Notes: generated by a model from the sequence alone, not told the origin. A stretch of DNA of 64,000 nucleotides from Raja brachyura (GCA_963514005.1 OY740797.1:25048001-25112000); one strand, 5' to 3'; counted from the first letter of the stretch, positions 3,452 to 62,938 are shown. Numbers and translations are program-made.

Positions 3452-3757
3452 TTCCACCAGCTCAGCTCAGAATCTCCAAACTGCCTGATCAAAACTCAAC
3501 CACATTGAATATCTTGTGTAAAACAGAAGAATTTTACCCGGAGTCATTTAACCTCACTTGGTTCCGAAATGGCATTGAGATTTTCGAGGACATAGATACA
3601 ATGGTAAAACTGACAATGAATGGATTATATGAAGTTTCCAGTCATTTAAAGGAAACAAGGACACTCCAGGGCGGGGCGGTCTATACTTGCCAAGTGGCGC
3701 ACCTCACTCTTCCCACTCCACTGACTACAACATATCATGTTCCGGATTCCAAAACAG
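3452..3757 (+). CDS. Gene 1 exon: Ig C1-set domain of a V-C1-TM-ITIM (SIRP-like) receptor; leader and V exons not found, presumably upstream of the window
   Basis: tttgcag| acceptor and G|gtaacg donor, phase 1-1. Translates VPPAQLRISK...LCKTEEFYPESFNLTWFRNG...NGLYEVSSHL...YTCQVAHLTL, with the C1-set motifs C-x4-FYP, W and YxCxVxH. Confidence 0.9.
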
Positions 3758-3867
3758 GTAACGTAGAAAACATTAGAATGTTGGATGGTAGCGGATTCAG
3801 ATAGTCGCGTTTGGAAAGCGAAGCGGCTTCGATGGAGACGATGATTGCTAAGTTGCAAAAGTATTAT

Positions 3868-4187
3868 CATAGAATCATAGAAAATAGGTGCAGGAGTAGG
3901 CCATTCGACCCTTCGAGCCTGCGCCGCCATTCAATATGATCATGGCTGATCATCCAACTCAGTGTGCTGTACCTGTCTTCGCCCCATACCCCCTCATCCC
4001 TTTAGCCACAAGGGCCACATCTAACTCCATCATAAATATAGCCAATGAATTGGCCTCAACTACCTTCTGTGGCAGAGAAGTTGCAAAAGTATTATCATAG
4101 AATCATAGAAAATAGGTGCAGGAGTAGGCCATTCAGCCCTACGAGCCTGCGCCGCCATTCAATATGGTCATGGCTGATCATCCAACT
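3868..4187 (-). mobile_element. Two tandem CR1 3'-end fragments
   Basis: Two copies of catagaatcatagaaaataggtgcaggagtaggccattc, matching the CR1 3' UTR elsewhere in the window. Confidence 0.85.
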
Positions 4188-4344
4188 ATTGTAATTCCAT
4201 CTTGCTTACTGCCTTAATTCTATTGTTAAAACTAACAGCGTGGATTTCAGATTGGACTAAATTGTAGTTGGAGCAGATAAAGCCCTTAACCGATTTGCTT
4301 ATTCATTTTAGAATATTAAGTAAATTTAAGTACAATACGTTTCA

Positions 4345-4560
4345 GGAGAGATGGGCACGTGCAATGTTTATCATGCGCTTTGTGGGAGACCAGCAATAAG
4401 TCTAATGTCGCTCGCGGCCATTCCTTCAGGAAATGCATTAAACATCAGTTCCTGACTGACGTTCTTCCGCATCTGGTATTTAGGATGGATTCGCTGTGCA
4501 GCATCCGCGGTGCTTCCGACGCTATGGATAGCTTGTTTCATCGTGTGGCCAATATTGATC
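4345..4560 (+). mobile_element. Degraded CR1 ORF1-like fragment
   Basis: QCLSCALWE...RKCIKHQFLTD, a CxxC..KC pattern resembling the CR1 ORF1 N-terminus. Confidence 0.4.
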
Positions 4561-6829
4561 GCTTTCGCAAAAAGACGCTTGGTGCCCAATGGCCAATTAG
4601 TAGCACAATCGGGAAGTGTGGATGTGCATTGACTTTGGATATCAAAGTTTAAGGAGCAAGTCCCCTGAAGTTGTTTAATCGAGAGTTCTTCCAGTACCAC
4701 TTGCGAATGAATATAGGAATAGGAGGATAGATCGGAACAATACTTGGCTGAATATATAGTTGAAAAGGGAGATCTTAAGGGAGATTTGAAGTGCTTTGCC
4801 AGTGGTGGTGTTGGAGGTACATGGAAGTACAGGCAATAGAGGCATATGGGTCATGTACAGGGAGATGTGTTCGGTTTGACGGCATCTTTAGCACAAATAT
4901 TGCGGCCCGAAGTGCCCGTTCCCGTGCTGTACTATTGTATACTCTGTGCTCTATAGAATAACAATCGCGTTGATGATGAACTGCAAATGTATTAGTCCTA
5001 TTATCAAATGTGTTATCGGGTGTTTGCGTCACAGATGTAGGCAAATCGGAATGATTTAAGATTAATATTATGTTAGTAGAGTGAGATTTCAAGTAGAGCA
5101 ATTCGAACATTTTTAGTGATAAAGACAAATTGTGCCCAGAAAGACATTCTGTGCTAGAATGTATGTAATCCAACTGTGATGGTGCTGCGCAGAAACGTAG
5201 GGTAATTTAAAGTAATTATATGGTCCAGTGGTTGGGAACAACATTTTCGATAGCGTCCATTAATTTAGGTTTCAGGTTAGTCATGGATCGAGATTACAAT
5301 CGTCTGGAAATTAAGATTGTGAATAGGGAAGGTGGCAAATTTATCGTACTATATGACCTGTCAAATTGAAACTGTATTTACGGTTAGGCCTACAGGGCTG
5401 AATCCTGTACATATCAAACACCGATAGTTGATGACCAACGTGTTCATTTAAGGGAGGAGGGAAATGGCAACGCCCAGGGTTATCAGACTGTTTGATGAAG
5501 TAAAGATAAAGGGGAAAAGCAAGCACATGAAATCAGGCGGGGCAGTTTTTTTACATTTCGTTGATCTATTATTCTTTATTATGTTATCTAAGATAATTAT
5601 GTTTACAGACCTATTACTTTGCTGCAACTAAGAATTGGCGCGTTCTTTTCGGTACATATGGCAATTCAGCATGCTTGGCGCTTACTCTCTTGACCCTTGT
5701 TGAAGAATAATTGCTCCGTTAGAATTCAGGATCGCACAGCTCCTTCGATGAGGGAGATCAACATCAATGCATGCTGCATTCAACAATACTTTTTATACTT
5801 TGAGATTGAGGTCTGCCTACTGAATGGGACTTAAAATTCAGTGTCACTGATCTCTCAGGCAATCAACGCTCATCTTTTAGTTGTCAGACGCCTCCGTATA
5901 TGCATTTGGCCCATAACGTATAACATATCTTTACCCCTTGATAGTCTGAAGAAGAACAAGGAGTTTCATTGACATGTTTTATTTAAAGAATGTTGACTTC
6001 TATCACTGGTTTTGAAGGAAGTTCTTTAATTCCCATTCGTTTTACCAATTATATTATATATATTTTAATATTTGACGTTATGCTCTCCAGTGCTTTGCAC
6101 CCATAAGCCAATTCCATGTACATTATTTCCTGTCTGCGATCCCCTCCTTTTACTGCAAGGTAAATTCGTTTCAAAATTCCACCATGTCTTACCAATTCCT
6201 CATGCATTTACAGATCTGCCCATTTCCATCATCTCGATGCCAATATGCAATATGGACATGTTGTGATTGCCGTTTGAGTCGGTGATGATTTTACGCACCA
6301 GCCATTGTTCCTCCCAATGGTATAACCGCGTTTACATTGAGTTGACTCATTGAGTTCCGCATCACAGCTTCCTCGATAGTTTGTCGGTTCAGGCGGCATA
6401 TCCAGTAAAGATAATTGTGGGCGGCCTCGCACCTTATGCAATAAATCCACAAAGTGGCCTAACCTCAGCACAATCTTATCTTTGCTTTGAAAGTCCAACA
6501 GCCTCCGATGGATCCAACCGTTCGGGCTAATTTGTGATATTTATTCAATATCATTTATCAACATTTCAAAGGAAAGCTGCTAATTTCAAATAACGTATCT
6601 ATTCTTAATTAGTTATATTGTTTTCTCATGGTGCGTTTCATCCTAGTGCTGTGAATATCGCTGATTTTCTCTTCGGCTAATATAAATTTATGATTTTTTT
6701 TAAATCCAACAAATTAGTTTTATACCTTATCTTTCAATTTAACGCATCAACCTACATTTGCCACATCTCTCAGACACTTACCGTTATTTCGTTTTGATTA
6801 TAAAATGTTTTGTGGGAGGACCCAACAGC

Positions 6830-7079
6830 TCTGGAGACCCGGATTTGATCCTCACTACGGGTGCTGCCCATGGATAATTTGTACCTTATCCCTGTGACTG
6901 TGTGAGTTTTCTCTGGGTGCTCCGGTTCCTACTGCATTGCCTAGGCGTACAAATTGGGTAGGTTAATTGGCATTTGTAAATTATTCCCAGTGTGCAGGAG
7001 AGAATTGTTGTACGAGCGATTGTTGGTCGGCGTGGACCCGCGATTTTATTTAGCTGTATCTCTAAAGTAAACTAAACTG
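6830..7079 (+). mobile_element. HE1-type tRNA-derived SINE
   Basis: B-box-like ggatttgatcc, core gtgctccggtt, 3' end ctgtatctctaaa plus (taaac)n. Confidence 0.75.
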
Positions 7080-7184: not shown

Positions 7185-7292
7185 ACAATAATTCGACCTA
7201 TATTCTTATTTATGGATGCGCAACGGGTGGAATTATATTTATTCTTCTGCTTATCATTACGATGGTGTGTCGACACATCAAGAGAAGTAGAC
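7185..7292 (+). CDS. Gene 1 transmembrane exon
   Basis: ttttacag| ... C|gtgagc, phase 1-1. DNNSTYILIYGCATGGIIFILLLIITMVCRHIKRSR: hydrophobic helix followed by a basic stop-transfer segment. Confidence 0.85.
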
Positions 7293-10630: not shown

Positions 10631-10668
10631 GAAATGGACGGCAGGCCTTTAATATAGCTGAAGACACG
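10631..10668 (+). CDS. Gene 1 first cytoplasmic mini-exon
   Basis: tttctattag| ... ACG|gtaagc, phase 1-0. (R)NGRQAFNIAEDT. Links the TM exon in frame to the tyrosine exon and parallels the 44-nt exon of gene 2. Confidence 0.7.
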
Positions 10669-11658: not shown

Positions 11659-11775
11659 CGGACGGGAAAAGAAAATGATGAATTCTGCTCATATGTAGCA
11701 TTAGATTTATCCAGGTCTAAGTCTAAGACGGTTTCAAATCTGAAAGGCACGGAGGAAAGAACCACATATGCAGAG
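11659..11775 (+). CDS. Gene 1 cytoplasmic tyrosine-motif exon
   Basis: ttttgcag| ... GAG|gtaggt, phase 0-0. RTGKENDEFCSYVALDLSRSK...EERTTYAE, homologous to gene 2 VSYAALNLS...TLYAQ. Confidence 0.85.
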
Positions 11776-11883: not shown

Positions 11884-11946
11884 ACTAAGCGAGTGAATGC
11901 TAGTCAGAAGCTGATTTATGCCTCTGTGGAGCTGCGTGGATTCTAG
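11884..11946 (+). CDS. Gene 1 terminal coding exon with ITIM
   Basis: ttcacag| TKRVNASQKLIYASVELRGF-TAG. LIYASV fits the ITIM consensus (I/V/L/S)xYxx(L/V). Confidence 0.8.
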   Translation, partial: TKRVNASQKLIYASVELRGF

Positions 11947-12358: not shown

Positions 12359-12759
12359 TTTATTTTTTATTGCTTGCTGTTGATCTATTTCAAACAGAAA
12401 TAACTCAATGGAGACCTTTGCAATTGCAATGATAGATGCCATGATTGTCCATCGTGAGTGGAAGTCATATTTCATGAATTCGTTGAAACTAAATGTTATG
12501 TCTATTCATGGAAAATTCCCCCTAAATTATCCGTATATGAACTACGAAGATAACCATCAGCGCCTTGTGATATGTTCCTTGAAATAATGTGTAGGCTGGC
12601 ATATTAATTTACTCTACCAAATTGCACCTCAAACAATTCCGACTGGAAGGGATGTTCAATATGGAGAAGCTTAAACGTTTACATAGATACCTACAATCAA
12701 ATGCGGGAAGCGGCGATTTCCCCATCCAGTAGCCAAGTCGAATCATCATTACCTAAGTT

Positions 12760-13628
12760 CTATGAGCCGAATTAGGCCATTCACTCAATCAGGTCTACTC
12801 CGCCATTCAAACATGGCTGATGTATATTTCCATTCTCCTACCTTCGCCCGATAACACCTGAAACCCTTCAATCTGTCAATCTCCACCTTAAAAATCCCAC
12901 AATCCTTTGTGGCAATGAATGCCACAGATTCGCCATCCTCCGACTAAAGACATTCCTCCTCATCTCGTTTCTAAAGGTTACTCCTTTAATTCGGAGGCTA
13001 TAGCTGCCGATCCTCGCCTCTCCCACTACTGGAAACATCCTCTCCACGTTTAATCTATCCAGGCCTTCACTATTCCGTAAGTTTCAATGAGGTCCCACAC
13101 TCCCCACTCTCCCACTCATCCTTCCAAACTCCAGCTAATACAGACCCAGTGCCTTCACACGCTCATCGTATGTTAACACAATCACTCCTGTGATCATTCC
13201 AGTAAACCTCCTCTAGACTCTCTCCAACGCCAGCACACCTTTCCTCAGATATGGAACCCAAAACCGCTCGCAATACTCCAAATGTGGTCTGACCGATACC
13301 TTATAAAGCCTCAGCATTACATCGATGTGTTTTTTATTCTGTCCCTCTCGATATAAATACCAATGTTGTATTCACCTTCTTTACTGTCGATTCGACTTGC
13401 AAATTAACTTTTTGGGTATCCTGCACCGGCATTCCCAAGTCCCTTTCTGAATTCTCCCCCCATTTAGAAAATAGTCTATGCCTTTATTCCTACTACCAAA
13501 ATACATGTCTCCGCACTTTGCTATGCTGTATTCCACCTGCCACATCTCAGCCCACTCTCTCAACCGAACCAAGTCTTTCTGCAGAGTCCCTGCTTTATCT
13601 ACACTACCTACCCCTCCACCTATCTTCG
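12760..13628 (-). mobile_element. CR1 RT 3' part
   Basis: REWAEMWQVEYSIAKC and RPHLEYC-type motifs. Confidence 0.85.
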
Positions 13629-14099
13629 TAAGTTCCTATGTTTCAACTGTGGCGATGTGGGTCAGAATTACTGTATACCATCTAAATTCCATCATAAAAC
13701 AGAGTTTGGAATGTATGACTTGAAAATTATTGGAGATTTGGTTGATGTGGGGAATGTTTCACAGCATGTGGGGAATGTGTCATTGTTTTCTTTAACCTTT
13801 TCACTGTAGGTCCTTGCTGGTTTAAGAGTGAACCCGGCCAATTCATTCATATGAGTAATATCAGTCCAAGTCATTGGTCTTGTGACATCCATGGTACACG
13901 AGTTACCTATTGTAGTGCTAATACTTGTACTGTTGTATGCCTTGTTTATCTATATATGTAACTAAAACTCATCTTGCTATCTGCAGGTTAGCATTGTTTT
14001 TCTATTTGCGCAAAAACAGTTTTTCCCCACTTTACTCACCACTGTCCTGTGCTGTAAATTCAATAAGTTTTGTTCAGATCGATGGTATATTTAAAAGCG

Positions 14100-15065
14100 T
14101 ATTAAGGTTTAAACCCCGTAATAAACCGCGCATGCGCATTTTGGGGACAGTTCCCGTGCGCATCTTTAATTGCGTTGCAAAGGGCACCCAACGGGTCCTC
14201 AGTCGCGCCTGCGCAGTTTGGGGTCTTTCCACAATTGAGATGGCGGGGCGGTGGCGACGAAGACGACGACAGGCCACGTTGACGATCTGGGGCATGGGCG
14301 TTGAAGCTGGCGGCGGCACCCGGCTCCGGGGATGGGGAGAGGCCACGGACGATCCAGGGCCTAACTGCTGAGGCTTACGGCGGCGGTCGGCTCTGGCCGG
14401 CTCCGGGGGCGAGCTGAGGCGGCACCGAGGATCCGAGGCCAGGGCGCTGAGCCTGGCGGCGGCGGCGCTGCTGCCTCCGGGCACACAAGCAGGGAAATGA
14501 GCGGCACTCTCGAGTTCCTGGTGAGGTGAGGAGGGAGGGTGGGGGGATTGAGGGAGAGGAGGGGGAGTGAGGAGGGAAGTGCGGGAGGTGAGGACGGAAA
14601 GTGGGGGAGGACGGGGATTAGGGAGGGGAGGGGGAGTGGGGGAGGTAGGAAGCGGGGAATAGAGGGAGGGGAGGGCAGTGAAAGAGGTAAGGAGGAACAG
14701 TAGGGGGAATAGGGGAGGTGAGGAGTGGGGGAGATGGGGGGTTGACGTATAGGGGAGGGGTAGGGAGAAGTTGGGAGGGGAGATGAGTTATGGAGCGGGG
14801 AGGGAGTGACGGAGGGTGGGGGAAAGGAGAGGGAGGGAGAGGTGAGGGAGGGTTTGGGGAGGGGAGGAGGAGAGGGGGAAGGAGAGGGAGGGTGAAGAGG
14901 AGGGGAGGTGCTGGGGACGAGGGGAACTGAGCCGCGCCTGGGCAGTTGAGGGCTATGGGTGAGTGGTAGAATATTGCGTTCGGGGAACGGGTTGCGTTGG
15001 GGGAACGGGTGAGTGGTCGATTACTGCGTTGGGGAAGCAGACCCAACAGGTCTGCACTTGGTATT
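14100..15065 (+). other. CpG-rich segment + G/A-rich tract + terminal hairpin (possible non-autonomous Helitron-like element)
   Basis: GCGCATGCGC 14128-14137; CpG-dense 14200-14520; purine tract 14520-14920; short tgcgttgggggaacgggt repeats; stem-loop GCAGACC-caaca-GGTCTGC at 15037-15055. Confidence 0.4.
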
Positions 15066-16697
15066 TTACTAATTAAATGTGGATGTGAAGAACAATGGGG
15101 ACTCGGCGTTGGGGGACAGCTGTGAGTGATGGCAGGACAACAAATGGGGACCCGGTGTGGGGAGAGAGGACACTCTAGTTTGGAATCTTCTGGCCGTAGG
15201 ATGAATCTGTGTTTGTTTGTTTGTTTGTTTGTTCATTTGTTCCAGTGAATGCGCTGTGCACACGGCAGCCAGCCAACAGTCTCTTTTCTTTTTCTTTTTT
15301 TCTCACTTTTAAATTCAAACTTTGAGCGCCTTGTGTGATGTGACTGTCGGTAGACTAATTTCCCTCCGGGGATGAATAGTTTTATCGTATCGTGTTGTAT
15401 CGTATCGAATCTAACAGGTGAGCCCTGAATTACATTATCGTACATACTGAGAGATCGTGGCTAAACTGTCACTGTGTCCCAGGGGTATTTACCTAACTAG
15501 TGATCCAAGGCATCAAACGGTGGAATGTAAGGAAAGTGACAGGATATGACATATTGAGAAGTGATTTATTGGGTGGAAATGGTTAAAGGGATAGCATGCA
15601 AAATAAAGAGCAACTAAAGAACGGCTATGGAGCTACTGCGGATTTCAGATAAATGATACAGTAGTAACCTTGATTGAACATTCTGTAACAACCTTGTATA
15701 ATTACCACAGTTAGCAGACAGGTGTATGTTGATGTATTTTACTGTCAATTGTTAACCGTGTAATGTTGCTGATATGGAAAAAGAATAACAGAGCCTTGGG
15801 GGGCGCTCATTAGTTGGGACTTCGCCCAGGGACTGTGTCGCTACCAGTGCCAAGGGAAAACTGCCAGCCTTGCTTGTGGGCGGATCCGCCTGCCACTGAC
15901 TGGGTGTCCACTTCGCGTTGTTGAAGAACCAGGATGATGAAAATGAAGTACCACCAGCATTAAGAATCAGTGAACCGAACTGCGTGTTTATGTTTTGGCG
16001 AAACTATTGCATGAAACAATAATTTAGTATGACCCGGTGTAAGGAATTTGACGCAGACACGATTAGAAAGCAACAATACAGCTTTCTATAGAACTGCAAT
16101 AATTGTTCCTCGAAGTCGTGCCCATTGCATGTCCTGTGGTGACAAGGCATCCAGGCCAGTTTATGTAGGAGGCAGGAGAAAAAGAGGATTCAACGATACA
16201 ACACGTAAAAGGTAGCTATATTCATACATTCTTATATGTATAAATATATCCTATTATTATGTGGGAAGGAATAATCTTTCCATTTGTTGGGTTCGTACAC
16301 ATGTGCCCATCCTCTCTAAAGGATGTAACCTCCCGAAGTCTATCGCTATCAAGGTGTCTGAGGGGTGGAAGATTGCAACCTTCACGTGGTCCGCCCTGTT
16401 TCGACTAATGCAATCAACTGGACGCGCACAAACGGAAGATCAAATAGAACAAGTTGTCCAACAACCTTAGGCTGTGCACGCCACACGACAGAAGAAGAAG
16501 AAGAAGAAGGTGACTGAAATAGCCGAGTGGAATATTTCCCGGAATAATACAACCATCTGGTCTGTTTGTATGAATCTCAAAAGGAACGACGGTCCTCATT
16601 GGAGATAATGATATATCTGCGCAACCAAGCCGGAGTTCCAGAAATGGAAATCAGCAGCTTACGCCCTAAATAGATACTCATAGGGGTACCAACCCAA

Positions 16698-21499: not shown

Positions 21500-23770
21500 T
21501 GAGTCAGTGAAGACTATAATATCAAGTCGTCCACAGTGTCCAGATAGAGGATAAGGCTATACCGTTAAGGATACGATAAAGTCCAGTGAATAAAGTCTCC
21601 TATGAGGTGGATGGGAATTCAGGACCGCTCGCTAGTTCATGACAGAATACTTCAGTTGTCTAATAACAACTGGGAATAAATTGTCCCTGAATCTACAGAA
21701 ATTGATTTTCATACTTCTGTACATTTTGCCTGATGGAATTGGGCAATATTGTATTGAATAGGCTAATGGGACGGAAGGATGATAAATCCCCTGGGCCTGA
21801 TGGTCTGCATCCCAGGGTCCTCAGGGATGTGGTTCTAGGAATAGTGGACGCATTCGTGATCATTTTCCAATGTTCAATAGATTCAGGATCAGTTCCTGTG
21901 GATTGGAGGATAGCTAATGTTATCCCACTTTTCAAAAAAGGAGCAAGAGAGGAAACGGGGAATTACAGACCAGTTAACCTGACTTCGGTGGTGGGAGAGA
22001 TGCTGGAGTCAATTATTAAAGAGGTAATAATGGGGCATTTGGATAGCAGTAAAAGGATTAGTCCAAGTCAACATGGATTTATGAAAGGAAAATCATGCTT
22101 GACTAATCTTTTTTGGGGATGTGACAAGTAAAATGGATGAAGGGGTGCCAGTGGATGTAGTGTATCTACACTTTCAGAAAGCCTTTGATAAGGTCCCTCA
22201 CGGGAGACTGCTGACTAAAATTAGAGCACATGGTATTGGGGGTAGGGTGTTGACATGGATATAAAATTGGTTGGCAGGCCGGAAGCAAAGAGTAGGAGTG
22301 AACGGGTCCTTTTCAGAATGCCAGGCAGTGTCGAGTGGAGTGCTGCAAGGCTCGGTGTTGGGGCCGCTACTGTTTACCGTATATATTAATGATTTGGAAG
22401 AGGGAATTAGGAGCAACACTAGCAAGTTTGCGGATGACACAAAGCTGGGTGGCAGTGTGAACTGTGAAGATGATGTTAGGAGGTTGCAGGGTGACCTGGA
22501 CAGGTTAAGTGAATGGGGAGATGCGTGGCAGATGCAGTATAATATTGATAAATGTAAGGTTATCCACTTTGGCGGAAAAAACAAGAGGGCAGATTATTAT
22601 CTGAAAGTTGACTTACAGGTACAGCAGGCAGTGAAGGAAGCTAATGGAATGTTGGCCTTCATAACAAGAGGATTTCAGTATAGGAGTAAAGAGGTTCTTC
22701 TGCAGTTGTATAGGGCTCTGGTGACACCACATCTGGAGTATTGTGTACAGTTTTGGTCTCCTAATTTGAGGAAGGACATCCTTATGTTTGAGGCAGTGCA
22801 GCGTAGGTTCATGAGATTGATCCCTGGGAAGGCGGGAATGTCATATGAGGAAAGATTGAAAAGACTAGGCTTGTATTCAATGGAGTTTAGAAGGATGAGG
22901 GGGGATCTTATAGAATATATAAAATTATAAAAGGACTCGACAATCTAGATGCAGGAAAAAATGTTCACAATGTTGGGCGAGTCCAGAACCAGGGGCCACA
23001 TTTTTAGAATAAAGGGGAGGTTATTTAAGACTAAGGTAAGAAAACACGTTTTCGCCCAGAGAGTTGTGAATTTATGGAATTCCCTGCCGCAGAGGGCAGT
23101 GGAGGCCAAATCACTGGATGGATTTGAGAGAGAGTTGGATAGAGCTCTAGGGGCTAGTGGTGTCAAGGGACATGGGGAGAAGGCAGGCACGGGTTACTGA
23201 TAGGGGACTATCAGCCATGATCACAATGAATGGCGGTGCTGGCACGAAGGGCCGAATAGCCTCCCCTGCACATATTTTATATGATTCTATGTTCTATGGA
23301 AGAGGGGGCGAAGTGGATTATGCTGGTGGCATTGCCGAGGTAGAATGAGAAGTGCAGATGGAGCCAATGGAAGAGAGGTTAGTCTACGTTGTAGCCTGGG
23401 GTACGTCCGCAACTCTCTGTAATTTCTAGCGGTCTTGGGTGTAGCTGTTCCCAAACCATGCCTTGATGCGTCACGATAAAATGTTTTCAATGGCACATCT
23501 TTTGAGGTAGGGCTGTTGGGGACATGCGTAACTGCCCAAGCCTTCTAAGAAAGTAGAGGAATTGGTGTGCTTTCTTTCCAATTGTATCGACGTGGCTGGT
23601 CCAGGACAATTTGTTGGTGATATGTATTCCTAAAAACCTGGAGCTTTCAGCCATCTTTCCTTTAGCAGCAACAATGTATACCAAGGTATGTGCACCGCTT
23701 CGCTTGCCGAAGTCGATCATAACTTATTTGTCTTGCTTTCATTAAGGGAACGGTTATGCCATGATATAAG
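21500..23770 (-). mobile_element. Rex1/Babar-type LINE 3' part, split by a CR1 insertion
   Basis: MIDFGK...FLGIHITNKLSWTSHVD...KKAHQFLYFLRRL (23487-23720). The element continues on the far side of the CR1 at 21500-21738. Confidence 0.65.
21739..23296 (+). mobile_element. CR1 LINE RT (5'-truncated, internal deletion)
   Basis: KSPGPDGLHP, NYRPV, QHGF, QGSVLGP, FADDTKL, PHLEYC. Tail tatgattctatgttct; possible atggaa TSD. Confidence 0.95.
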
Positions 23771-25505: not shown

Positions 25506-25560
25506 ATGTTGTCCAGCATTGTACTTCGCTGTTTCTCTTTTTGGGGGATAATTTTCACAG
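25506..25560 (+). CDS. Gene 2 leader (signal peptide) exon
   Basis: ATG at 25506, MLSSIVLRCFSFWGIIFT then G|gtacat (phase 1). A 162-bp intron separates it from the V exon. Confidence 0.8.
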
Positions 25561-25722: not shown

Positions 25723-26043
25723 GGTATGGGAAAACTGCAGACAAAATAGCTCAATTTCCTAAAGCAGTGAATGTCTCGATGGGCCAAAATGCTTCGTTTC
25801 ACTGCTCTCTTCCCTTCTCTCGTGACGGGCCCAGCGTAAGCGTACATTGGTGGAAGCAGGATGAAAATGTTTTTTTCAGCTCAGACCCTGACGGGAGAAC
25901 GGTTTCCGGCGTCGCTACTAAATTCAGTGGCTCCCTGAAAATAGTCAATGTGAGCCGACAGGATGCCGGAGTGTATTATTGTACCATCACCCGCCGGGGC
26001 ACTTTAGTTGGCAACGGGACCGGGTCGACTTTAGTTGTGTTGG
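25723..26043 (+). CDS. Gene 2 V-set domain exon with fused J-like segment
   Basis: cctttag| ... G|gtaagt. ...[20 protein letters not shown]...VHWWKQ...[36 protein letters not shown]: B-strand C, C-strand W, DxGxYYC and GxGSxLxV. Confidence 0.92.
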
Positions 26044-39612: not shown

Positions 39613-39780
39613 ACCAAGCAGAAACCAATAGCTGGTAAAGTGATTTACGGACCTCTCGCTACAACGGGAAACAAGACAGGAGAAAACAGATATCGTTGGG
39701 ATAATTACACGGACAACTCACAGCCAATAAAGCAAATGCGAGGTGCAGATGGTATATATTCGGAATGGATTCCCAAGTAG
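39613..39780 (+). CDS. Gene 2 terminal exon C, copy 2 (intact, ITIM)
   Basis: ctcgcag| TKQKPIAGKVIYGPLATTGNK...GIYSEWIPK-TAG. VIYGPL is an ITIM and aligns with gene 1 KLIYASV. Confidence 0.75.
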   Translation, partial: TKQKPIAGKVIYGPLATTGNKTGENRYRWDNYTDNSQPIKQMRGADGIYSEWIPK

Positions 39781-41540: not shown

Positions 41541-41580
<40 letters not shown>

Positions 41581-44370: not shown

Positions 44371-44379
44371 TTCGTCAAA

Positions 44380-45035
44380 GATAAAGAAGAAACAATGAAC
44401 TGCAGATGCTGGTTTAACAAGGAAGACAAAATACTGTAATAATTTAGCGGGTTATCTTAACATATCCAACCCTTTCCATTCCTGGAAAACTTGGATAGGG
44501 TGACATTTTTCGGTTCAGGGCCCTTCTTCAGACTGATGACGTTTTAGGCCGTGACGGATTCAGCGGGATTATCTCCTGCACCTCACTTCCCTTTCTTGAT
44601 CCCTCTGGCTCCACCACAGAGGGCAGACTATGGACTGACGTCTACTGCACACCTACCGACACTCACAGTTATCTGAACTACACTTCCTTTCACCCTAGCT
44701 CTTGCAAATACGATATCCCCTATTCTCAATTCCCCCAGTCAGTTCCCACGATGAGGCTTTTCAATCAAGGACATTAGAGATGTCCTCTTTCTTTCGTTAA
44801 AGTAGTTCTCCCCTTCTGTGATATACGAATCCCTGCTCCACGTCACCTCCGTGGGCCCGTAGCTCTGTTCTCTCTCCCTCACCCACAGGATGGAACACGG
44901 TGACATGAATCCTTGGTATTCATCTTTCACCCCAACAGCCTCGGCTTGCAACACATCAGCCTCTGACATTTATGGTACCTTCAAAGCAGGGACGTGCGGT
45001 CAGGGGAGGCAGATCCTCACCTATCATACTCCCAA
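44380..45035 (+). mobile_element. Degraded Penelope-like fragment(s)
   Basis: PFLD..., PTDTHSYLNYTSFHP.SCK..IPYSQF-like translation, with an inverted terminal-repeat piece at 44390-44535. Confidence 0.6.
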
Positions 45036-45994: not shown

Positions 45995-46975
45995 TTCCTC
46001 TCTCCCTTCTCTCCCCCCCCCCCCCCCCATTCCCTCTCTCCGCATTCACTCTCTCTCCCCATTCTCTCTCTCACTCCCCTCTCTCCCCCCTTTCTCTCCA
46101 CTTTCTCTCTCTCTCCCCATTCTCTCTCTCCCCATTCTCGCTCTCCTTTCTCTCTCTCCTCTCTCTCTCTCCCTTCTCTCTCTCTCCCTTCTCTCTCTCC
46201 CTTCTCCCCCCCCATTCGCTCTCTCTCTCTCTCATTCTCTCTGTCTCCACTCTCTCTCCCCATTCTCTCTCTCTCTCATTCTCTCTCCTCTCTCTCTCTC
46301 CCTATTCTCTCTGTCCCCATTCTCCCTCCTTTCTCTCTCCGTTCTCCCTTTCTCCATTCTCTCTCTCATTCTCTCTCTCCCATTCTCTCCCTCTCCCATT
46401 ATCTCTGTCCCTACTCTCTCTCTCTCTCTCTCCCATTCTCTCTCCCTCCCCATTCTCTCTCTCTCCCCCATTCTCTCTCTCTCCATTCTCTCTCTCTCCC
46501 TATTCTCTCTCCCTCTCTCTCCATTCCCTCGCTCTCTATCTCCTCTCTCTTTCTCCCTTCTCTCTCTCTCCTCCCTTCTCTCTCGCTCCTCTCTCTCTCT
46601 CCCTTCTCTCTCGCTCNNNNNNNNNNNNNNNNNNNNNNNNNNNNNNNNNNNNNNNNNNNNNNNNNNNNNNNNNNNNNNNNNNNNNNNNNNNNNNNNNNNN
46701 NNNNNNNNNNNNNNNNNNNNNNNNNNNNNNNNNNNNNNNNNNNNNNNNNNNNNNNNNNNNNNNNNNNNNNNNNNNNNNNNNNNNNNNNNNNNNNNNNNNN
46801 NNNNNNNNNNNNNNNNNNNNNNNNNNNNNNCCTTCTCTCTCTTCCTTCTCTCTCTCCCTTCTCTCTCTCCCACCCTTCTCTCTCTATCTCTCTCTCTCCC
46901 TCCTTTCTCTCTCTCTCTCCCTCCCTTCTCTTCTCTATCCCTACCTCCCAGCCACGACTCCACCCCTCTCTCTTC
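45995..46975 (+). repeat. CT-rich low-complexity tract containing an assembly gap (N 46617-46830)
   Basis: Direct inspection; 214 Ns. Confidence 0.95.
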
Positions 46976-53742: not shown

Positions 53743-53904
53743 AAGACAAAAAAAAATCCTCAGCAGTGCTCTATCGAGAGCCTTTGCCGCCGAAACAACT
53801 GCCGGGGCACCTTGCTTTAGCGATTCCAAGGCAGAGGAGTCGATAACTGAATTCCCTCCATTCTGAATCAATAATGTGCAGAGATGTAAGAAAGCAGAAA
53901 ATAA

Positions 53905-56297
53905 TAGAAAAAACATAGAAAAATAGGTGCAGGAGTAGGCCATTCGGCCCTTCGAGCCTGCACCGCCATTCAATGTGATCATGGCTGATCATCCAACTGT
54001 ATCCCGTACCTGCCTTCTCTCCATACCCCCTGATCCCTTTAGCCACAAGTGCCACATCTAACGCCCTCTTAAATATAGCCAATGAACTGGCCTCAACTAT
54101 ACTCTGTGACAGAGAATTCCAGAGACTCACCACTCTCTGTGTAAAGAATGTTTTCCTCATCTCGGTCCTAAAAGAATTCCCCCTTATCCTTAGACTGTGA
54201 CCCCTTGTTCTGGACTCCCCCAACATCGGGAACAATCTTCCAGCATTTAGCTTGTCCAACCCCTTAAGAATTTTGTACGTTTCTATAAGATCCCCCCTCG
54301 ATTCCAGCGAGTACAAACCGAGTCTGTCAAATCTTTCCTCATATGAAAATCCTGACATCCCAGGAATCAGTCTGGTGAATCTTCTCTGTACCCCCTCTAT
54401 GGCAAGGATGTCTTTCCTCAGATTTGGAGACCAAAACTGTATGCAATACTCCAGGTGTGGCCTCACCAAAACCCTGTACAACTGCAGTAGAACCTCCCTG
54501 CTCCTATACTCAAATCCTTTCGCTATGAATGCTAACATACCATTTGCTTTCTTCACTGCCTGCTGCACCTGCATGCCTACTTTCAATGACTGGTGTACCA
54601 TGACACCCAAGTCTCGTTGCATCTCCCCTTTTCCTAATCTGCCACCATTCAGATAATAGTCTACCCTCATGTTTTTGCCACCAAAGTGGATAACCTCACA
54701 TTTATCCACATTATACTGCATCTGCCATCCATCTGCCCATTCACTCAGCCTATCCAAATCACCCTGCAGCCTCCAAGCATCCTCCTCACACCTAACTATA
54801 CCCCCCAGCTTGGTGTCATCTGCAAATTTGGAGATCTTGCATTGAATTCCCTCGTCCAAATCATTAATATATATTTTAATAGCTGGGGTCCCAGCACTGA
54901 GCCTTGCGGTACCCCACTAGTCACTGCCTGCCATTCTGAAAAGGACCCGTTTACTTCTACCCTTTGCCTCCTGTCTGCTAGCCAGTTCTCTAACCACATC
55001 AATGCTGAACCCCCAATACCGTGTGCTTTAAGTTTGTATACTAATCTCTTATGCGGGACCTTGTCGAAAGCCTTCTGAAAGTCTAGATATAACACATCCA
55101 GTGGTTCTCCCTTATCCACTCTACTAGTTACATCCTCGAAAAATTATATCAGATTTGTCAGACATGATTTACCTTTCGTAAATCCATGCTGACTTTGTCC
55201 AATGATTTCACCACTTTCCAAATGCGCTGCTATCCCATCTTTAATAACTGACTCTAGCAGTTTCCCCACTACCGATGTTAGACTAACTGGTCTGTAATTC
55301 CCCGCTATCTCTCTCCCTCCTTTTTTAAAAAGTGGGATTACATTAGCTACTCTCCAATCCTCAGGAACTACTCCAGAATCTAAGGAATTTTGAAAAATTA
55401 TCACTAATGCATCCACTATTTCTGTGGCTACCTCCTTGAGTGCTCTGGGATGCAGACTATCTGGCCCTGGAGATTTATCGGCCTTCAATCCGTTCAATTT
55501 ACCCAACACCACCTCCCGGCTAACCTGGATTTCACTCAGTTCCTCCATCTTATTTGACCCCCGTTCCACTGCTATTTCCGGCAGATTATTTATGTCTTCC
55601 TTAGTGAAGACAGAACCAAAGTAGTTATTCAATTGGTCTACCATGTCCTTGTTCCCCATGATCAATTCACCTGTTTCTGACTGCAAGGGACCAACACTTG
55701 TTTTAACTAGTCTCTTTCTCTTCACATATCTATAACAACTTTTGCAGTCAGTTTTTATGTTCCCTGCCAGTTTCCTTTCATAATCTATTTTCCCTTTCCT
55801 AATTAAGCCCTTTGTCCTCCTCTGCTGGATTCTGAATTTCTCCCAGTCCTCCGGTAGGCTGCTTTTTCTGGCAAATTTGTATGCCTCATCTTTTGTTTTT
55901 ATACTTTCCCTGATTTCCCTTGTTATCCATGGATGCACCACCTTCACCGATTTATTCTTTTGCCAAACTGGTATGAACAATTGTTGTACTTCATTCATGC
56001 AGTCTTTAAATACCTTCCATTGCACATCCACTGTCAACCCTTTAAGAATCACCTGCCAGTCTATCTTGACCAATTCACATCTCATACCTTCAAAGTTACC
56101 TTTGGTCAAGTTCAGAACCTTTGTTTCTGAATTAATTTTGGCACTCTCCATCCTAATGAAGAACTCAACCATATTATAGTCACTCTTGCCCAAGGGGCCA
56201 CGCACAACAAGACTGCTAACTAACCCTTCCTCATTACTCAATACCCAGTCTAGAATAGCCTGCTCTCTCGTTGGTTCCTCCACATGTTGGTTGAGAA
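53905..56297 (-). mobile_element. Relatively young CR1 LINE, 5'-truncated ORF2 with few frameshifts
   Basis: ORFs of 379, 107 and 362 aa covering the end of the endonuclease, the linker and the whole RT; 3' tail present. Confidence 0.97.
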
Positions 56298-56473
56298 AAT
56301 AATGATCCAGAGCGAGTAAGTTTAGAAATTTCGCCTCGAAGAATGGGCGACAGGAAGTTTTAAATGCCCTCTCGAACTACGAACTGGACATCTGCCTGAT
56401 CCTTCAAAATGAAGAGCAAGAGAAAAATACTGAAGGACGAAAGTAGTTTCGGCCAACTTAATCCACACGAAAT

Positions 56474-57082: not shown

Positions 57083-57128
57083 ATGTTAATCTATTTGTAC
57101 CTTTGCGCGCTGTGGGTTTTTTATGAAG
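57083..57128 (+). CDS. Gene 3 leader exon
   Basis: MLIYLYLCALWVFYE then G|gtattc (phase 1), followed by a 121-bp intron. Same layout as gene 2. Confidence 0.78.
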
Positions 57129-57249: not shown

Positions 57250-57561
57250 TGGCTCCAGCGACAATATCCCAGATCCCTAAAGCTAGCACGGTGATGATGG
57301 GAACAGATGTCACCTTCGAATGCGTTACCAGCGAGATTCCGAACAAAGCAAGTCTGACTGTAAATTGGTGGAAACTTGGTGATGAAAGACTATTACAACC
57401 AAGTTCACATGGCAGAAAACGGGTTATTCAGTTGGAAAACGATAGGAATTTGCTCAAAATCCTTGATGTCCGTGTCGCCGACTCTGGGATATACTACTGT
57501 AGTGTAGGTCAGCAACAAAATGAGATTGTGAGCGGAACCGGATCCAGGCTTCAGGTGCATG
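57250..57561 (+). CDS. Gene 3 V-set domain exon with fused J-like segment
   Basis: ttgacag| ... G|gtgaga. ISQIPKASTVMMGTDVTFEC...VNWWKL...LKILDVRVADSGIYYCSVGQQQNEIVSGTGSRLQVH. Confidence 0.92.
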
Positions 57562-58580: not shown

Positions 58581-58886
58581 CTTCTCCAGAACCTGTCAGC
58601 CTTTCCCCCAAAGCGCCGAAAAACTCGTCCAATCTCGTCCTTGTGTGCAGGACAGGAGAGTTTTACCCGGAGTCTCTCATCTTCACTTGGTATAAAAATG
58701 ACACCAACATTAAGACTGGTATCAGCACAAGTAAAATCCTGAACACAAACGGAACTTATGCAGCATCCAGCAGCTTGGAAACATTGCAGCCGTCCGGGAG
58801 TGGCGCTTTGTATACCTGTCTGGTAACCCACCTCACACTTCAGAGTCCAGCTATGGCTATTTACGTTGATGCCAGTCTTAATCCGG
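58581..58886 (+). CDS. Gene 3 Ig C1-set exon
   Basis: cccacag| ... G|gtaaga. LVCRTGEFYPESLIFTWYKND...NGTYAASSSL...YTCLVTHLTL. Same 306-nt length as the gene 1 C1 exon. Confidence 0.9.
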
Positions 58887-59978: not shown

Positions 59979-60092
59979 CCAAAGAAAAAACACATCTGTT
60001 CCTCTTGGTTTGTGGATGTGCATTGAGCGTATGCGTTTGCCTTGCCGTCACAGTTCTCAGTCGGAGAAAATGTCAATTCCGTAAACAGGAAG
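59979..60092 (+). CDS. Gene 3 transmembrane exon
   Basis: ctcgtag| ... G|gtaagg. AKEKTHLFLLVCGCALSVCVCLAVTVLSRRKCQFRKQE. Confidence 0.82.
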
Positions 60093-60151
60093 GTAAGGAA
60101 GATTCAGTGAAATTTCCTTCGGGTTCATTTAAAGAATAGAGGGAAACAGCG

Positions 60152-60427: not shown

Positions 60428-60779
60428 GTTAGTGAAAAACGAAAGCCAACGTTATATCTGTCATAATTACTCAATTAACCGATTAGTGGATATCCACGTA
60501 TAGAGTGTTTAATATTGTTTTGTTGATTACAGTTGTTAAACTAAGTCGGGTAAAATACAAATCTTACAGATGTCATGTTTATTTTATTTTAAACCCACGA
60601 CTCCCAAGGGGTTACGGCAGTAGATATTTCGCAGTATATGTTCCCAGTCGTATTATGGCGATGATGTAATTTGAGAACGCTCTTCAAATACCTTCCCTCC
60701 ATGGATTTTACGTCACAATTGCTTCCGAGGACAGTTCGCTGCAACTGTTGTACTCTTCCTACTGAGCCCTTGCACATTG

Positions 60780-61440: not shown

Positions 61441-62254
61441 GGCAACATCTTCGTAAATATCTCTGCACCCTTTCCAACGGCAATAATCCTTTAAATACTT
61501 TAAATACTTTAAATGCAATATTAATTAAATACCATATGAAGGAAATGTATGCCCATGCGAAAAGATGGACTGCCTCAAAAATCTATACAATTCTTTAGAA
61601 AGTCATCAGGAGCTTACGAACAAGACGTGATTCTGCGATTCTTTCCGCCCAATACTTGTCACGGTTATTCCAAATCTAATGTCAACAGGCTAACGCCAAA
61701 TTGGTGCAACATTACCCTGATCACGTCTTAACGCCTTTGAATACAACAAAAACAGGACAAGCATTTCCCTTCGAACATTCTTCAATATAATATTTCGTAA
61801 CGATTTTAGTATCCATTTGAGCGATTGAAATATGTGAAACAAACACGGAGACAAATGCGGTTTTCTCCAGAACGGCGAGTGGAATATTCCTTCTTCCTAG
61901 TGTTTTGCGAACCATTTGGGCGACTGTACACGGTTGTGAGCTAACTACAAAATCCATTGATTTTATAGATCATGAAGGAGGTGATTGAATATACGCCACA
62001 CCATGGCAAATGCGCAGGTTTATCAAAAGATAAGAACGAAAGGGCTGTGAATAATCTCTAGATATCCACTTGGAACAATGAACAATGAACGATGAATTCC
62101 AAATAATGTAGCAGGACAAACAAATAATTGGATGAGCTGGAGACTACATTAACCTGAACCAGACGAACTGCCATCTGTTAATAAAAACGTCAATGTGGCA
62201 ATTCTGACAACTTCAAATTAGAGCGGATTATTATTTATTGCTCATTGCACACGC

Positions 62255-62441
62255 TCGTGTGTGTGTGGCTCTGTGTGTGTGTGCTAGCTTGTGTGTGCGT
62301 GTGTGTTTCAGTGTATGTACGTGTGTGTGTGTTTGTGTGCGTCTATGTGTGTGTTTGTGCGTGTGCGTGTGAGTGCGTGCGTATGTGCGTGCTTGTGTGC
62401 CTGCGTGTGTGCGTGCGCGTATGTATACGTGCGTGTGTATA

Positions 62442-62483
<42 letters not shown>

Positions 62484-62610
62484 AGCCTGTCTGTGTGTAT
62501 GTGCGTGTGCGTGTCTGTGCGTGTGTGGGTGTATGTGCGCGCGTGTGTTTGTGTGTGTGCGTGTGTGTGTGTGCGTGTGCGTGTGCGCGTGCGTGTGCGT
62601 ATCTGTGAGC
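62255..62610 (+). repeat. (GT)n/(GC)-mixed microsatellite
   Basis: Direct inspection. Confidence 0.95.
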
Positions 62611-62894
62611 GCACGTCTGTTTAGGTGGTTTGGGTTTTCATGAGCATGGGTTTGTTAGAGTTTTATGCCAGTTTTTCTCTCTGGGTGTGAACGTGCTGAG
62701 CCTGCGCTTTTGCGCGTATTTGTTCAGTACTGCAAGTCTGGTCTGAAAGCTTGCAGCTAAATGTTATTTGACATATCATTAATTAATTATTATAATCTAG
62801 TTTAAAGGTCATCAATTTAATTAGTATTGTGGAATTATAAAACATTTCGGAACATGATGGTATACACTATTTTAAATACCAATTATTTGTTTAG

Positions 62895-62938
62895 ATTCCG
62901 AACGCATGAAAGGCAACGGACAAGAAGGAATACAGTGA
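62895..62938 (+). CDS. Gene 3 candidate cytoplasmic mini-exon ending in a stop
   Basis: ttgtttag| (D)SERMKGNGQEGIQ-TGA-TAA. Phase-1 start and size match mini-exon A of the paralogs. Confidence 0.5.

What the first reader, a model, noticed from the sequence alone, without database searches (positions are those of the whole stretch)
3452..62938. Tandem cluster of divergent, non-rearranging VJ-C1 antigen-receptor-like genes with ITIM tails
Seen: three same-strand paralogs share exon order and phases (L1-V1-C1-TM1-A0-B0-C). Genes 2 and 3 each have one V and one C1 domain, the ectodomain plan of a single TCR or Ig light chain, and genes 1 and 2 carry tyrosine inhibitory motifs. The paralogs are old: the gene 1 and gene 3 C1 exons are both 306 nt and align without gaps at about 38/102 identities by my manual count, and the two V domains look more divergent still. 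Known: C1-set domains are largely confined to antigen receptors, MHC, b2m, tapasin and SIRP, and mammalian SIRPalpha is V-C1-C1 with ITIMs. Inference: this is a diversified family of innate inhibitory or paired receptors of a cartilaginous fish. It may be unnamed (auto-annotation would likely say SIRP-like) and is relevant to the pre-RAG ancestor of antigen receptors.
Basis: partly seen in the sequence, partly recalled or inferred. Interest (0 to 1): 0.85.

Follow-up and report, generated by a model that had tools for sequence, protein, structure and literature searches.

The report
SIRP-like V-C1 receptor gene cluster
The window holds three old paralogs of a large, unnamed immune-receptor family of cartilaginous fish (one antibody-like V domain, one C1 domain, a membrane anchor, and usually an inhibitory tail), which databases label inconsistently and which most resembles mammalian SIRP.

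Summary
Three same-strand genes carry clean phase-1 Ig exons: a germline-joined VJ-type V-set exon (genes 2 and 3) and one C1-set exon each, then a TM exon.

Corrections:
- Gene 1's V lies outside the window.
- Gene 2 has two complete copies of its three-exon tail.
- Gene 3 has a short tail with no tyrosine motif, not an A0-B0-C tail.
- The N gap sits in an intergenic CT repeat and touches no exon.

The genes belong to a family found in sharks, rays, skates and chimaera, with dozens of paralogs per genome. NCBI names it six different ways, most often "SIRP-alpha-like". Each window gene falls in its own well-supported clade with shark orthologs.

The closest known kin are SIRP (tail motif layout, C1 closest to SIRPα d3, Atlas neighbours) and, by architecture, PRARP, whose sequences I could not obtain. 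One C1 domain instead of two fails the SIRP definition.

I found no paper describing the family. Expression and synteny could not be tested.

The scan has noted similar genes elsewhere in this genome: 31 kb and about 5 Mb upstream, and on another piece.

The parts
3452..3757 (+). gene 1, C1-set exon (306 nt, phase 1-1). Gene 1's leader and V exons are not in the window; a retroelement fills 0.1-3.0 kb.
   Evidence: AG/GT borders. Pfam C1-set E 1.5e-11. Best PDB single-domain match is SIRPα d3 at 29.4 bits.
7185..7292 (+). gene 1, TM exon (phase 1-1), with no charged residue in the membrane span
   Evidence: Paralog match to the g2 TM exon; borders.
10631..10668 (+). gene 1, candidate juxtamembrane exon A (phase 1-0). 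Predicted only.
   Evidence: Clearly the best splice-signal candidate of the right phase (score 9.0 against 6.9 for the next). No homology support.
11659..11775 (+). gene 1, cytoplasmic exon B (phase 0-0), carrying ..FCSYVALDL..(25 residues)..TTYAE
   Evidence: Aligns to shark and skate tails.
11884..11946 (+). gene 1, last exon C with canonical ITIM LIYASV and the stop codon
   Evidence: Aligns to the Heptranchias tail.
25506..25560 (+). gene 2, leader exon (phase 1). The 162-nt intron before V is the split leader typical of Ig/TCR V genes.
   Evidence: Matches the leaders of four shark and ray family members; donor site.
25723..26043 (+). gene 2, V-set exon with a germline-joined J-like G strand (..[23 protein letters not shown]) and no RSS
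   Evidence: Pfam V-set E 5.8e-12. 82-83% identical to the Leucoraja and Amblyraja orthologs. No heptamer or nonamer.
27726..28040 (+). gene 2, C1-set exon (315 nt)
   Evidence: Pfam C1-set E 2.7e-11. 87-88% identical to skate orthologs.
31794..31898 (+). gene 2, TM exon (phase 1-1)
   Evidence: 32/34 identical to Amblyraja P0174.
34507..36907 (+). gene 2, tail cassette a. Exon A is 34507-34550. Exon B is 36044-36151 (ITIM VSYAAL, then TLYAQ). Exon C is 36722-36907, where the third Tyr is lost (VIDVPL).
   Evidence: Mapped with the Amblyraja ortholog protein. Splice sites.
37658..39780 (+). gene 2, duplicated tail cassette b. Exon A' is 37658-37701. Exon B' is 39128-39235 (VPYAAL, TLYAQ). Exon C' is 39613-39780 (ITIM VIYGPL, then GIYSEW, then stop).
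   Evidence: Direct repeats with about 3.1 kb spacing, 87-95% identical. Splice sites intact.
33695..33811 (+). fragment of a third C-type tail end, upstream of cassette a
   Evidence: 90% identical over 39 aa to the C-terminus of Amblyraja P0174.
46617..46830 (.). assembly gap, intergenic, inside a CT-rich simple repeat
   Evidence: No family exon lies within 6.8 kb on either side.
57083..57128 (+). gene 3, leader exon (phase 1), followed by a 121-nt intron before V
   Evidence: MLIYLYLCALWVFYE matches the leader of Leucoraja P0211.
57250..57561 (+). gene 3, V-set exon with a J-like strand (..YYCSVGQQQNEIVSGTGSRLQVH) and no RSS
   Evidence: Pfam V-set E 7.2e-10. 84% identical to P0211. No RSS.
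58581..58886 (+). gene 3, C1-set exon (306 nt)
   Evidence: Pfam C1-set E 8.4e-13. 88% identical to P0211.
59979..60092 (+). gene 3, TM exon (phase 1-1), with no charged residue in the span
   Evidence: 28/37 identical to P0211.
62895..62938 (+). gene 3, last exon (DSERMKGNGQEGIQ then stop), giving a short tail with no tyrosine motif
   Evidence: Good acceptor, and phase 1 gives Asp as in the ortholog's ..RKQE-DH end. Inferred; no RNA evidence.

Best explanation
The window carries three members of a Chondrichthyes-wide, lineage-expanded family of non-rearranging type I membrane receptors. Each has a split leader, one V-set domain whose J-like G strand is encoded in the same exon, one C1-set domain, a TM helix and a modular tail.

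Genes 1 and 2 are inhibitory-type. Their tails carry the family's recurring unit: x-x-Y-A-x-L-(D/N)-L, about 23-25 residues, then T-x-Y-A-x-T, followed by a further [LV]-I-Y-x-x-[VL]. Once phosphorylated, this unit would recruit the tandem SH2 domains of SHP-1/SHP-2, as in SIRPα. That step is inferred.

Gene 2 has two complete alternative tail cassettes, with one or two canonical ITIMs. Gene 3 belongs to a short-tailed lineage with no tyrosine motif and no charged TM residue, comparable to SIRPγ.

The three genes are products of duplications older than the shark-batoid split. The family is most likely a distant relative of SIRP, sharing C1 and tail features, that has one C1 domain instead of two. 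It is not a SIRP in the strict sense.

Shown: exons, domains, motifs, orthologs and the tree. Inferred: expression, SHP recruitment, ligand binding by V, and kinship with SIRP.
For: Gene structure and domains:
- Exons and domains are established.
- No RSS is present.
- The predicted structure of the g3 ortholog (pLDDT 86.6) is V + C + TM helix. Foldseek's top 50 hits are all Ig light chains. The C domain superposes on MHC II α2/β2, IgNAR C, CH3 and CD1 α3 at 1.4-2.4 Å.

Family range and age:
- Orthologs are intact in Leucoraja and Amblyraja at 82-89% identity.
- The family occurs in at least 18 chondrichthyan species, including Callorhinchus, with many paralogs on one chromosome per species.
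- The three window genes fall in three separate clades with shark orthologs: support 99/94, 100/100 and 100/99 in the C1 tree, and the V tree agrees for g2 and g3.
- The recurring tail motifs appear across the family.

SIRP likeness:
- The best single-domain PDB match of the family C1 is SIRPα d3 at 47.9 bits, against UrIg2 C3 at 39 and CH3 at 33. It includes a shared VPPT start.
- g1 C1 scores 29.4 bits against SIRPα d3 and 16.9 against lambda C.
- The nearest named ESM Atlas clusters are SIRPα, at 0.96.
Against: - There is no RNA evidence for any junction.
- There is one C1 domain, not two.
- The co-linear V+C1 profile score is slightly higher to Ig light chains (about 75 bits) than to SIRPα d1-d2 (67.6).
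- The V domain shows no special likeness to SIRP d1.
- Fold comparison does not discriminate: SIRPγ, UrIg2, B7-H6, BTN and TCR all score Z 13-15.
- Paired ITIM-type tyrosines about 25 residues apart occur in many unrelated inhibitory receptors, so the tail likeness may be convergent.
- Synteny with the SIRP locus could not be examined.
- Several tail tyrosines are not canonical ITIMs once spliced (C-S-Y-V-A-L, T-x-Y-A-x-T).
Confidence: 0.7

Rival explanations
1. They are true SIRP co-orthologs: the chondrichthyan SIRP locus itself, in which the ancestral form had one C1 domain (or one was lost), and which binds a CD47-like ligand.
For: - NCBI's most frequent automatic name is SIRPα-like.
- The top Atlas neighbours are SIRPα clusters.
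- The C1 domain is closest to SIRPα d3.
- Shark and chimaera members have four to six tail tyrosines in SIRPα-like pairs.
- ITIM, short-tail and TM-Arg forms coexist in the family, like SIRP α, γ and β.
- The Amblyraja ortholog model has V-C1-C1.
Against: - The defining V-C1-C1 plan is not met in any window gene.
- The two C1 domains in Amblyraja are near-identical, so this is a recent duplication or an assembly artefact.
- V-C1 scores higher to Ig light chain than to SIRPα d1-d2.
- Neither synteny nor CD47 binding was tested.
Confidence: 0.35
2. [quoted passage not shown] 2019, J Immunol 202:1992). As I recall it, these are non-rearranging VJ-C-TM genes with ITIMs, described in bony vertebrates and said to be MHC-linked.
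For: The architecture matches what I recall of PRARP (own knowledge; the paper is not in the library). PMC10751288 lists PRARP among the VJ genes of the MHC.
Against: No PRARP sequence could be obtained, so nothing was tested. As I recall, PRARP is a linked gene pair, not a family of dozens. NCBI's pipeline does not name any member PRARP-like.
Confidence: 0.12
3. They are B7/butyrophilin-type ligands (V plus a C1-like domain), not receptors of the SIRP type.
For: Some members are auto-named NCR3LG1 (B7-H6)-like or CD276 homolog. B7-H6, PD-L2, B7-H3 and BTN are among the tied top two-domain structural matches at Z 14-15.
Against: - Pfam C1-set scores E 8e-13 against 2e-4 for CD80-like C2-set_2.
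- The V domain has a J-like GxGTxLxV strand.
- The top profile-to-PDB sequence hits are Ig, UrIg2 and SIRP, with no B7 member in the best 60.
- The tails carry serial ITIM-type motifs.
Confidence: 0.05
4. One or more of the window genes are unexpressed pseudogenes in a fast-turnover cluster.
For: - There is no transcript evidence.
- g1 lacks V in the window, and a retroelement sits just upstream of its C1 exon.
- g2's cassette-a exon C has lost its tyrosine and is frameshifted near its end relative to Amblyraja.
Against: - All exons are open, with intact splice sites.
- The canonical Cys, Trp and Y-x-C residues are kept.
- g2 and g3 have intact orthologs at 82-89% identity in two other skates, and the C1 and TM exons are more conserved than V in g2.
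Confidence: 0.1

Closest known systems
SIRP family (SIRPα/β/γ; PTPNS1/SHPS-1/CD172)
   Same: - A non-rearranging V-set domain with a J-like strand is followed by C1-set domain(s), a TM segment and a tail.
- Tail tyrosines come in pairs about 23-26 residues apart (YAxL(D/N)L ... xEYAx). The spacing in human SIRPα is from my memory.
- The family C1 is closest in sequence to SIRPα d3.
- ITIM-bearing, short-tailed and TM-Arg forms coexist.
- It is a multigene cluster.
- The same link to antigen receptor evolution has been argued for SIRP (PMC2785349).
   Different: - There is one C1 domain, not two.
- The V domain is not especially SIRP-like.
- There are dozens of paralogs, in lineages older than the shark-ray split.
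- The ligand (CD47?) is unknown.
- Synteny is untested.
UrIg and UrIg2 (elasmobranch non-rearranging VJ-C1 genes; PMC12227049)
   Same: - They occur in the same taxa.
- They have a single-exon VJ domain, a split leader and C1-set domains.
- UrIg2 is among the best PDB sequence hits.
- Both are auto-annotated as Ig light chain-like.
   Different: - UrIg has 3 C1 domains and is secreted.
- UrIg2 has 9-11 C1 domains, and the paper mentions no ITIM.
- Each is described as one gene, not a family.
- The V-C1 profile score is lower (56 bits) than to IgL or SIRPα.
PRARP (Fu et al. 2019)
   Same: A VJ-C-TM architecture with ITIMs that does not rearrange (from memory).
   Different: As I recall it was reported in bony vertebrates as a gene pair. 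No sequences were available here for a test.
Ig light chains / TCR chains
   Same: - The ectodomain plan is V-J-C1.
- They give the highest co-linear profile score (about 75 bits), and all of the Foldseek top 50 hits.
- The short leader intron is shared.
   Different: V and J are fused in the germline and there is no RSS. The family also has its own TM segment and an ITIM tail, and is a dispersed paralog family rather than a V(D)J locus.

Membership tests
SIRP | The ectodomain has one V-set plus two C1-set domains (PMC12975943, PMC2785349). | tested here: not met
   There is one C1 exon per gene, and no second C1 lies between V and TM. Most family members in other species are also V-C1.
SIRP | The cytoplasmic tail carries ITIM tyrosines that recruit SHP-1/SHP-2 (α form). 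| tested here: inconclusive
   The motif layout is present in g1 and g2 and across the family. Phosphatase binding cannot be tested here. g3 has no such tail.
SIRP | Sequence kinship is closer to SIRP than to other V-C1 proteins. | tested here: inconclusive
   The C1 domain is best to SIRPα d3 (47.9 bits). But V+C1 scores about 75 bits to IgL against 67.6 to SIRPα d1-d2. Atlas neighbours are SIRPα. No tree with SIRP was possible, because no SIRP sequences could be fetched.
SIRP | D1 binds CD47. | not testable with these tools
   No ligand data.
SIRP | Conserved synteny with the SIRP locus. | not testable with these tools
UrIg / UrIg2 | VJ is followed by three (UrIg, secreted) or nine to eleven (UrIg2) C1 domains (PMC12227049). 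| tested here: not met
   There is one C1 domain, followed by TM and a tail.
UrIg / UrIg2 | Linkage to the MHC class III region (UrIg) or to the IgH/TCRαδ complex (UrIg2). | not testable with these tools
   No flanking marker genes lie in the window.
PRARP | Orthology to the chicken, Xenopus or fish PRARP gene pair. | not testable with these tools
   The paper and its sequences are not held. The architecture agrees, but only from memory.
Rearranging antigen receptors (IgL, TCR) | Separate V and J segments flanked by RSS. | tested here: not met
   The YYC...GxGTxLxV stretch is contiguous in one exon. No heptamer or nonamer lies in or within 300 nt of the V exons.
C1-set domain proteins | The domain is C1-set rather than C2- or I-set. 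| tested here: met
   Pfam C1-set E 1e-11 to 8e-13, above the gathering score. Structural best matches are MHC II, IgNAR C, CH3 and CD1 α3.
B7 / butyrophilin | A V domain plus a CD80-type C domain, with sequence kinship to B7. | tested here: not met
   C2-set_2 scores E 2e-4 against C1-set 8e-13. No B7 member is among the best 60 profile hits. There are only tied structural matches.

The most novel reading that the evidence does not exclude
This family is the surviving, expanded descendant of the ancestral two-domain VJ-C1 membrane receptor from which both SIRP and the chains of rearranging antigen receptors derive. On this reading its chains pair through their C1 domains, forming homo- or heterodimers whose two V domains face a ligand. 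That would make it a better living model of the pre-RAG receptor than the multi-C1 UrIg genes.
Probability: 0.1. Interest if true: 0.8.

Novelty: new variant of a known kind. Interest (0 to 1): 0.45.

Why it matters
C1-set domains are almost confined to the adaptive immune system. Non-rearranging VJ-C1 genes (SIRP, PRARP, UrIg, UrIg2) are the current candidates for relatives of the gene that the RAG transposon split.

A large, old VJ-C1 family with exactly the two-domain plan proposed for that precursor exists in all cartilaginous fish lineages, yet it is hidden under six unrelated automatic names. It should be named, placed in V and C trees, and mapped relative to the MHC, its paralogons and the SIRP locus.

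In practice the exon maps here, including the duplicated tail cassette, give ready targets for RT-PCR and for correcting gene models.

If the family turns out to be plain SIRP co-orthologs, the result is a useful but ordinary extension of SIRP to the base of the jawed vertebrates.

Tried and rejected
- Paralog-by-paralog search for the small exon A failed. It was solved for g2 with the Amblyraja protein and only predicted for g1.
- No A/B/C-type tail exons were found downstream of g3's TM exon using 58 family proteins.
- RNA evidence was unavailable. No RNA run holds the stretch.
It still counted. Only local scripts read the whole window file.
- The representative search with g3's V was swamped by giant multi-Ig proteins. 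Only the short hits were usable.
- The word-indexed profile search found no bony-vertebrate member. Given that prefilter, this says nothing about absence.
- Fold searches could not rank SIRP, UrIg2, B7 and TCR.
- V-loop-focused divergence between skate orthologs gave no consistent pattern: the FG loop is variable in g3 but invariant in g2.
- MDIR and NITR were considered and dropped because, from my own knowledge, they lack C1 domains.
- The PRARP and UrIg 2023 papers could not be read.
Searches were exon by exon by reference, or used database orthologs.

Full report
**The gap**

The only run of N (46617-46830, 214 letters) lies inside a CT-rich simple repeat that continues on both sides. The nearest family exons are 39780 upstream and 57083 downstream. 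No reading frame or gene model depends on continuity across the gap. What the gap hides cannot be known, and I did not try to fill it.

**What is in the sequence**

A stop-to-stop scan of both strands for Ig hallmarks finds exactly five Ig exons, all on the + strand. A tblastn of 58 family proteins against the whole window finds no others.

All five have AG/GT borders and are phase 1-1:

| Gene | Exon | Coordinates | Length |
|---|---|---|---|
| g1 | C1 | 3452-3757 | 306 nt |
| g2 | V | 25723-26043 | 321 nt |
| g2 | C1 | 27726-28040 | 315 nt |
| g3 | V | 57250-57561 | 312 nt |
| g3 | C1 | 58581-58886 | 306 nt |

- Pfam calls the V exons V-set (E 5.8e-12 and 7.2e-10). It calls the others C1-set (E 1.5e-11, 2.7e-11, 8.4e-13). 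All are above the curated cut-offs.
- Both V exons run from the YYC motif through a 9-10 residue loop into a J-like strand ([19 protein letters not shown]) within the same exon. No RSS heptamer or nonamer lies in or near them. They need no rearrangement.
The g1 and g3 C1 domains share 38 of 101 residues with no gap. g1/g2 share 38/101, g2/g3 35/101, and the two V domains 33/103.

**Gene models**

TM exons were found by paralog comparison at 7185-7292, 31794-31898 and 59979-60092. All are phase 1-1.

*Gene 2* is complete.
- The leader is 25506-25560. It matches the leaders of four family members.
- The Amblyraja radiata ortholog protein P0174 let me place the tail exons: A at 34507-34550, B at 36044-36151 and C at 36722-36907.
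- The whole A-B-C cassette is tandemly duplicated. The repeat spacing is about 3.1 kb and the copies are 87-95% identical. The second copy has intact splice sites: 37658-37701, 39128-39235 and 39613-39780.
- A fragment of a third C-type end lies at 33695-33811.
- Cassette a encodes VSYAAL (a canonical ITIM) and TLYAQ-T. Its C exon has lost the third tyrosine.
- Cassette b encodes VPYAAL, TLYAQ-T, VIYGPL (a canonical ITIM) and GIYSEW.

*Gene 1* has C1, TM, exon B (11659-11775: CSYVAL, then TTYAE 25 residues later) and exon C (11884-11946: LIYASV, then stop).
- Exon A is predicted from splice signals alone, at 10631-10668.
- The leader and V exons are not in the window. A retroelement occupies most of the 3.4 kb upstream.

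- Its Leucoraja ortholog P0211 (84% identical in V, 88% in C1) ends two residues after the TM exon.
- In the window, the TM exon (phase 1) fits a 44-nt last exon at 62895-62938 that starts with the same Asp.
- The leader is 57083-57128.
- Gene 3 therefore has a short tail with no tyrosine motif. None of the three TM segments has a charged residue.

No junction is backed by RNA.

**What family this is**

The g2 C1 exon finds a 319-aa Leucoraja protein at 87% identity, plus shark proteins at 50-62%. The HMMER scan with g3's V and the profile search with an 18-member alignment return only chondrichthyan proteins among the short hits.

- These come from at least 18 species of sharks, rays, skates and the chimaera Callorhinchus. 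There are typically many paralogs on one chromosome per species.
- NCBI's automatic names for them are inconsistent. They include SIRPα-like ([quoted passage not shown]), SIRPβ1-like, Ig lambda-1 light chain-like, NCR3 ligand 1-like, tapasin-related-like, CD276 homolog and H-2 class II β-like.
- Most members are V-C1-TM proteins of 260-410 aa.
- Their tails repeat one unit up to three times: YAxL(D/N)L, about 23 residues, TVYAQT. Other members have short tails, some with Arg or Glu in the TM segment.

In maximum-likelihood trees of the C1 domain (65 rows) and the V domain (59 rows), each window gene sits in its own starred clade with shark sequences:

| Window gene | Groups with | Support |
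|---|---|---|
| g1 | Mustelus, Heterodontus, Heptranchias | 99/94 |
| g2 | skates, then rays, then five sharks | 100/100 |
| g3 | Leucoraja, then Heterodontus and Mustelus | 100/99 |

The duplications therefore predate the shark-batoid split. I left out no rows apart from domains under 60 profile positions. The root is a midpoint, used for drawing only.

**Closest known families**

UrIg and UrIg2 are published elasmobranch non-rearranging VJ-C1 genes. They have three or nine to eleven C1 domains, and each is a single gene (PMC12227049).

SIRP is defined by V-C1-C1, an ITIM tail that recruits SHP-1/2, and CD47 binding (PMC12975943). Its link to antigen receptor origins was argued in 2009 (PMC2785349).

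Per-domain scores of the family profile against solved chains:

| Match | Bits |
|---|---|
| V+C1 vs Ig κ/λ light chains | about 75 |
| V+C1 vs SIRPα d1-d2 | 67.6 |
| V+C1 vs UrIg2 V-C1 | 56 |
| V+C1 vs VH-CH1 | 45 |
| C1 alone vs SIRPα d3 (includes the shared VPPT start) | 47.9 |
| C1 alone vs UrIg2 C3 | 39 |
| C1 alone vs IgG CH3 | 33 |

- g1's C1 alone scores 29.4 bits to SIRPα d3 and 16.9 to lambda C.
- The nearest named ESM Atlas clusters are SIRPα, at 0.96.
- The predicted structure of the g3 ortholog (pLDDT 86.6) matches Ig light chains throughout Foldseek's top 50. Its C domain superposes on classic C1-set domains. But SIRPγ, UrIg2, B7-H6, butyrophilins and TCR chains are all tied at Z 13-15.

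The family is therefore an old V-C1 lineage, roughly equidistant from light chains, SIRP and UrIg2 in its ectodomain. It has extra SIRP-like features in C1 and in the tail. It fails the V-C1-C1 criterion, so I do not file it as SIRP.

PRARP (Fu et al. 2019) has, from my memory, the same architecture. Neither the paper nor its sequences could be obtained.

**Dimer test**

Two copies of the g3 ortholog's ectodomain scored 0.41 against a best control of 0.13. The runs agreed in at least 82% of contacts, and partner pLDDT was 85.
- The mark was reached by 21 of 30 proteins solved as pairs of one chain and by 0 of 23 solved as single chains. Those counts are for microbes.
- On eukaryotes the mark was reached by 17 of 29 pairs and 0 of 30 single chains. 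A pass may also come from the model's memory of Ig dimers.
- The predicted contact is entirely in the C1 domain, on strands C, F and G (residues 156-163, 197-201, 209-216; strands). From my own knowledge, that is not the A-B-E-D face used by CL-CH1 or CH3-CH3.

I take this as weak support that the chains may pair, and no more.

**Likely mechanism**

The V domain binds an unknown ligand. In g1 and g2, Src-family kinases would phosphorylate the tail tyrosines. Pairs of phosphotyrosines about 25 residues apart would engage the tandem SH2 domains of SHP-1/2 and dampen activation, as in SIRPα. This rests on the motifs alone.

g2 may choose between a one-ITIM and a two-ITIM tail by using cassette a or b. 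That is inferred from intact splice sites only.

g3 would bind a ligand without signalling by itself, like SIRPγ.

**Literature and earlier notes**

Eight full-text searches found no paper describing this family. The library lacks most subscription journals, so a description may still exist.

The scan's own notes record similar genes on the same piece, 31.6 kb upstream and 4.9-5.1 Mb upstream, and on another piece.

**Verdict**

The finding is real and carefully observed. It represents an unnamed but publicly annotated family: a variant of the SIRP/PRARP kind of non-rearranging VJ-C1 receptor. Interest is moderate.

Noticed in passing
window 33695-39780: The whole three-exon cytoplasmic cassette (A-B-C) of gene 2 is tandemly duplicated, with a unit of about 3.1 kb and 87-95% identity. 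A fragment of a third C-type end lies upstream. Copy a has lost the last tyrosine, while copy b keeps an extra canonical ITIM. The scan's note s1-880978 covers this.
   Followed up: yes
protein P0174 (Amblyraja radiata ortholog of gene 2): The NCBI model has two near-identical C1 domains in tandem (V-C1-C1). This is either a very recent exon duplication that recreates the SIRP three-domain plan, or an assembly or model artefact. The window's gene 2 has a single C1 exon.
   Followed up: partly
window 12408-14333 and 14000-16000: The first 66 residues of the Leucoraja gene 2 ortholog model (P0001) map to three pieces 11-13 kb upstream of gene 2's real leader, next to a GC-rich stretch (53% GC). 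This is either an alternative upstream first exon or promoter, or a mis-joined gene model.
   Followed up: no
window 28644-28979 (gene 2, C1-TM intron): Another note (s1-881032) calls this long palindrome hammerhead-like. It gets no Rfam match at gathering score. Below that score there are only generic hairpin (miRNA-precursor) matches, on both strands, and no hammerhead family.
   Followed up: partly
window 63882-64000: An open frame running off the window end encodes ..RSGESNVAYAKSVQMPDNE.., weakly like the family's YAxL tail exon (E about 0.8). It could be a relic, an alternative tail exon of gene 3, or chance.
   Followed up: partly
window 498-2700 (-), 21706-23200 (+), 43283-44460 (-), 53774-56376 (-): Several copies of a reverse-transcriptase-bearing retroelement lie between and beside the receptor genes. 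One shark family model (P0061) has such a piece fused to its N-terminus.
   Followed up: no
window 62185-62654: A long TG/CA-rich microsatellite lies in gene 3's last intron. Part of it (62419-62456) tripped the reads tool's filter.
   Followed up: no
family proteins P0073, P0184, P0189 (rays, sawfish): In the clade next to gene 1's, batoid members have an Arg in the TM segment and short tails. The shark member (P0077) has Gly there and a four-tyrosine tail. This looks like an inhibitory-to-activating switch, as the scan's note s1-880772 suggests for the gene 31 kb upstream.
   Followed up: partly
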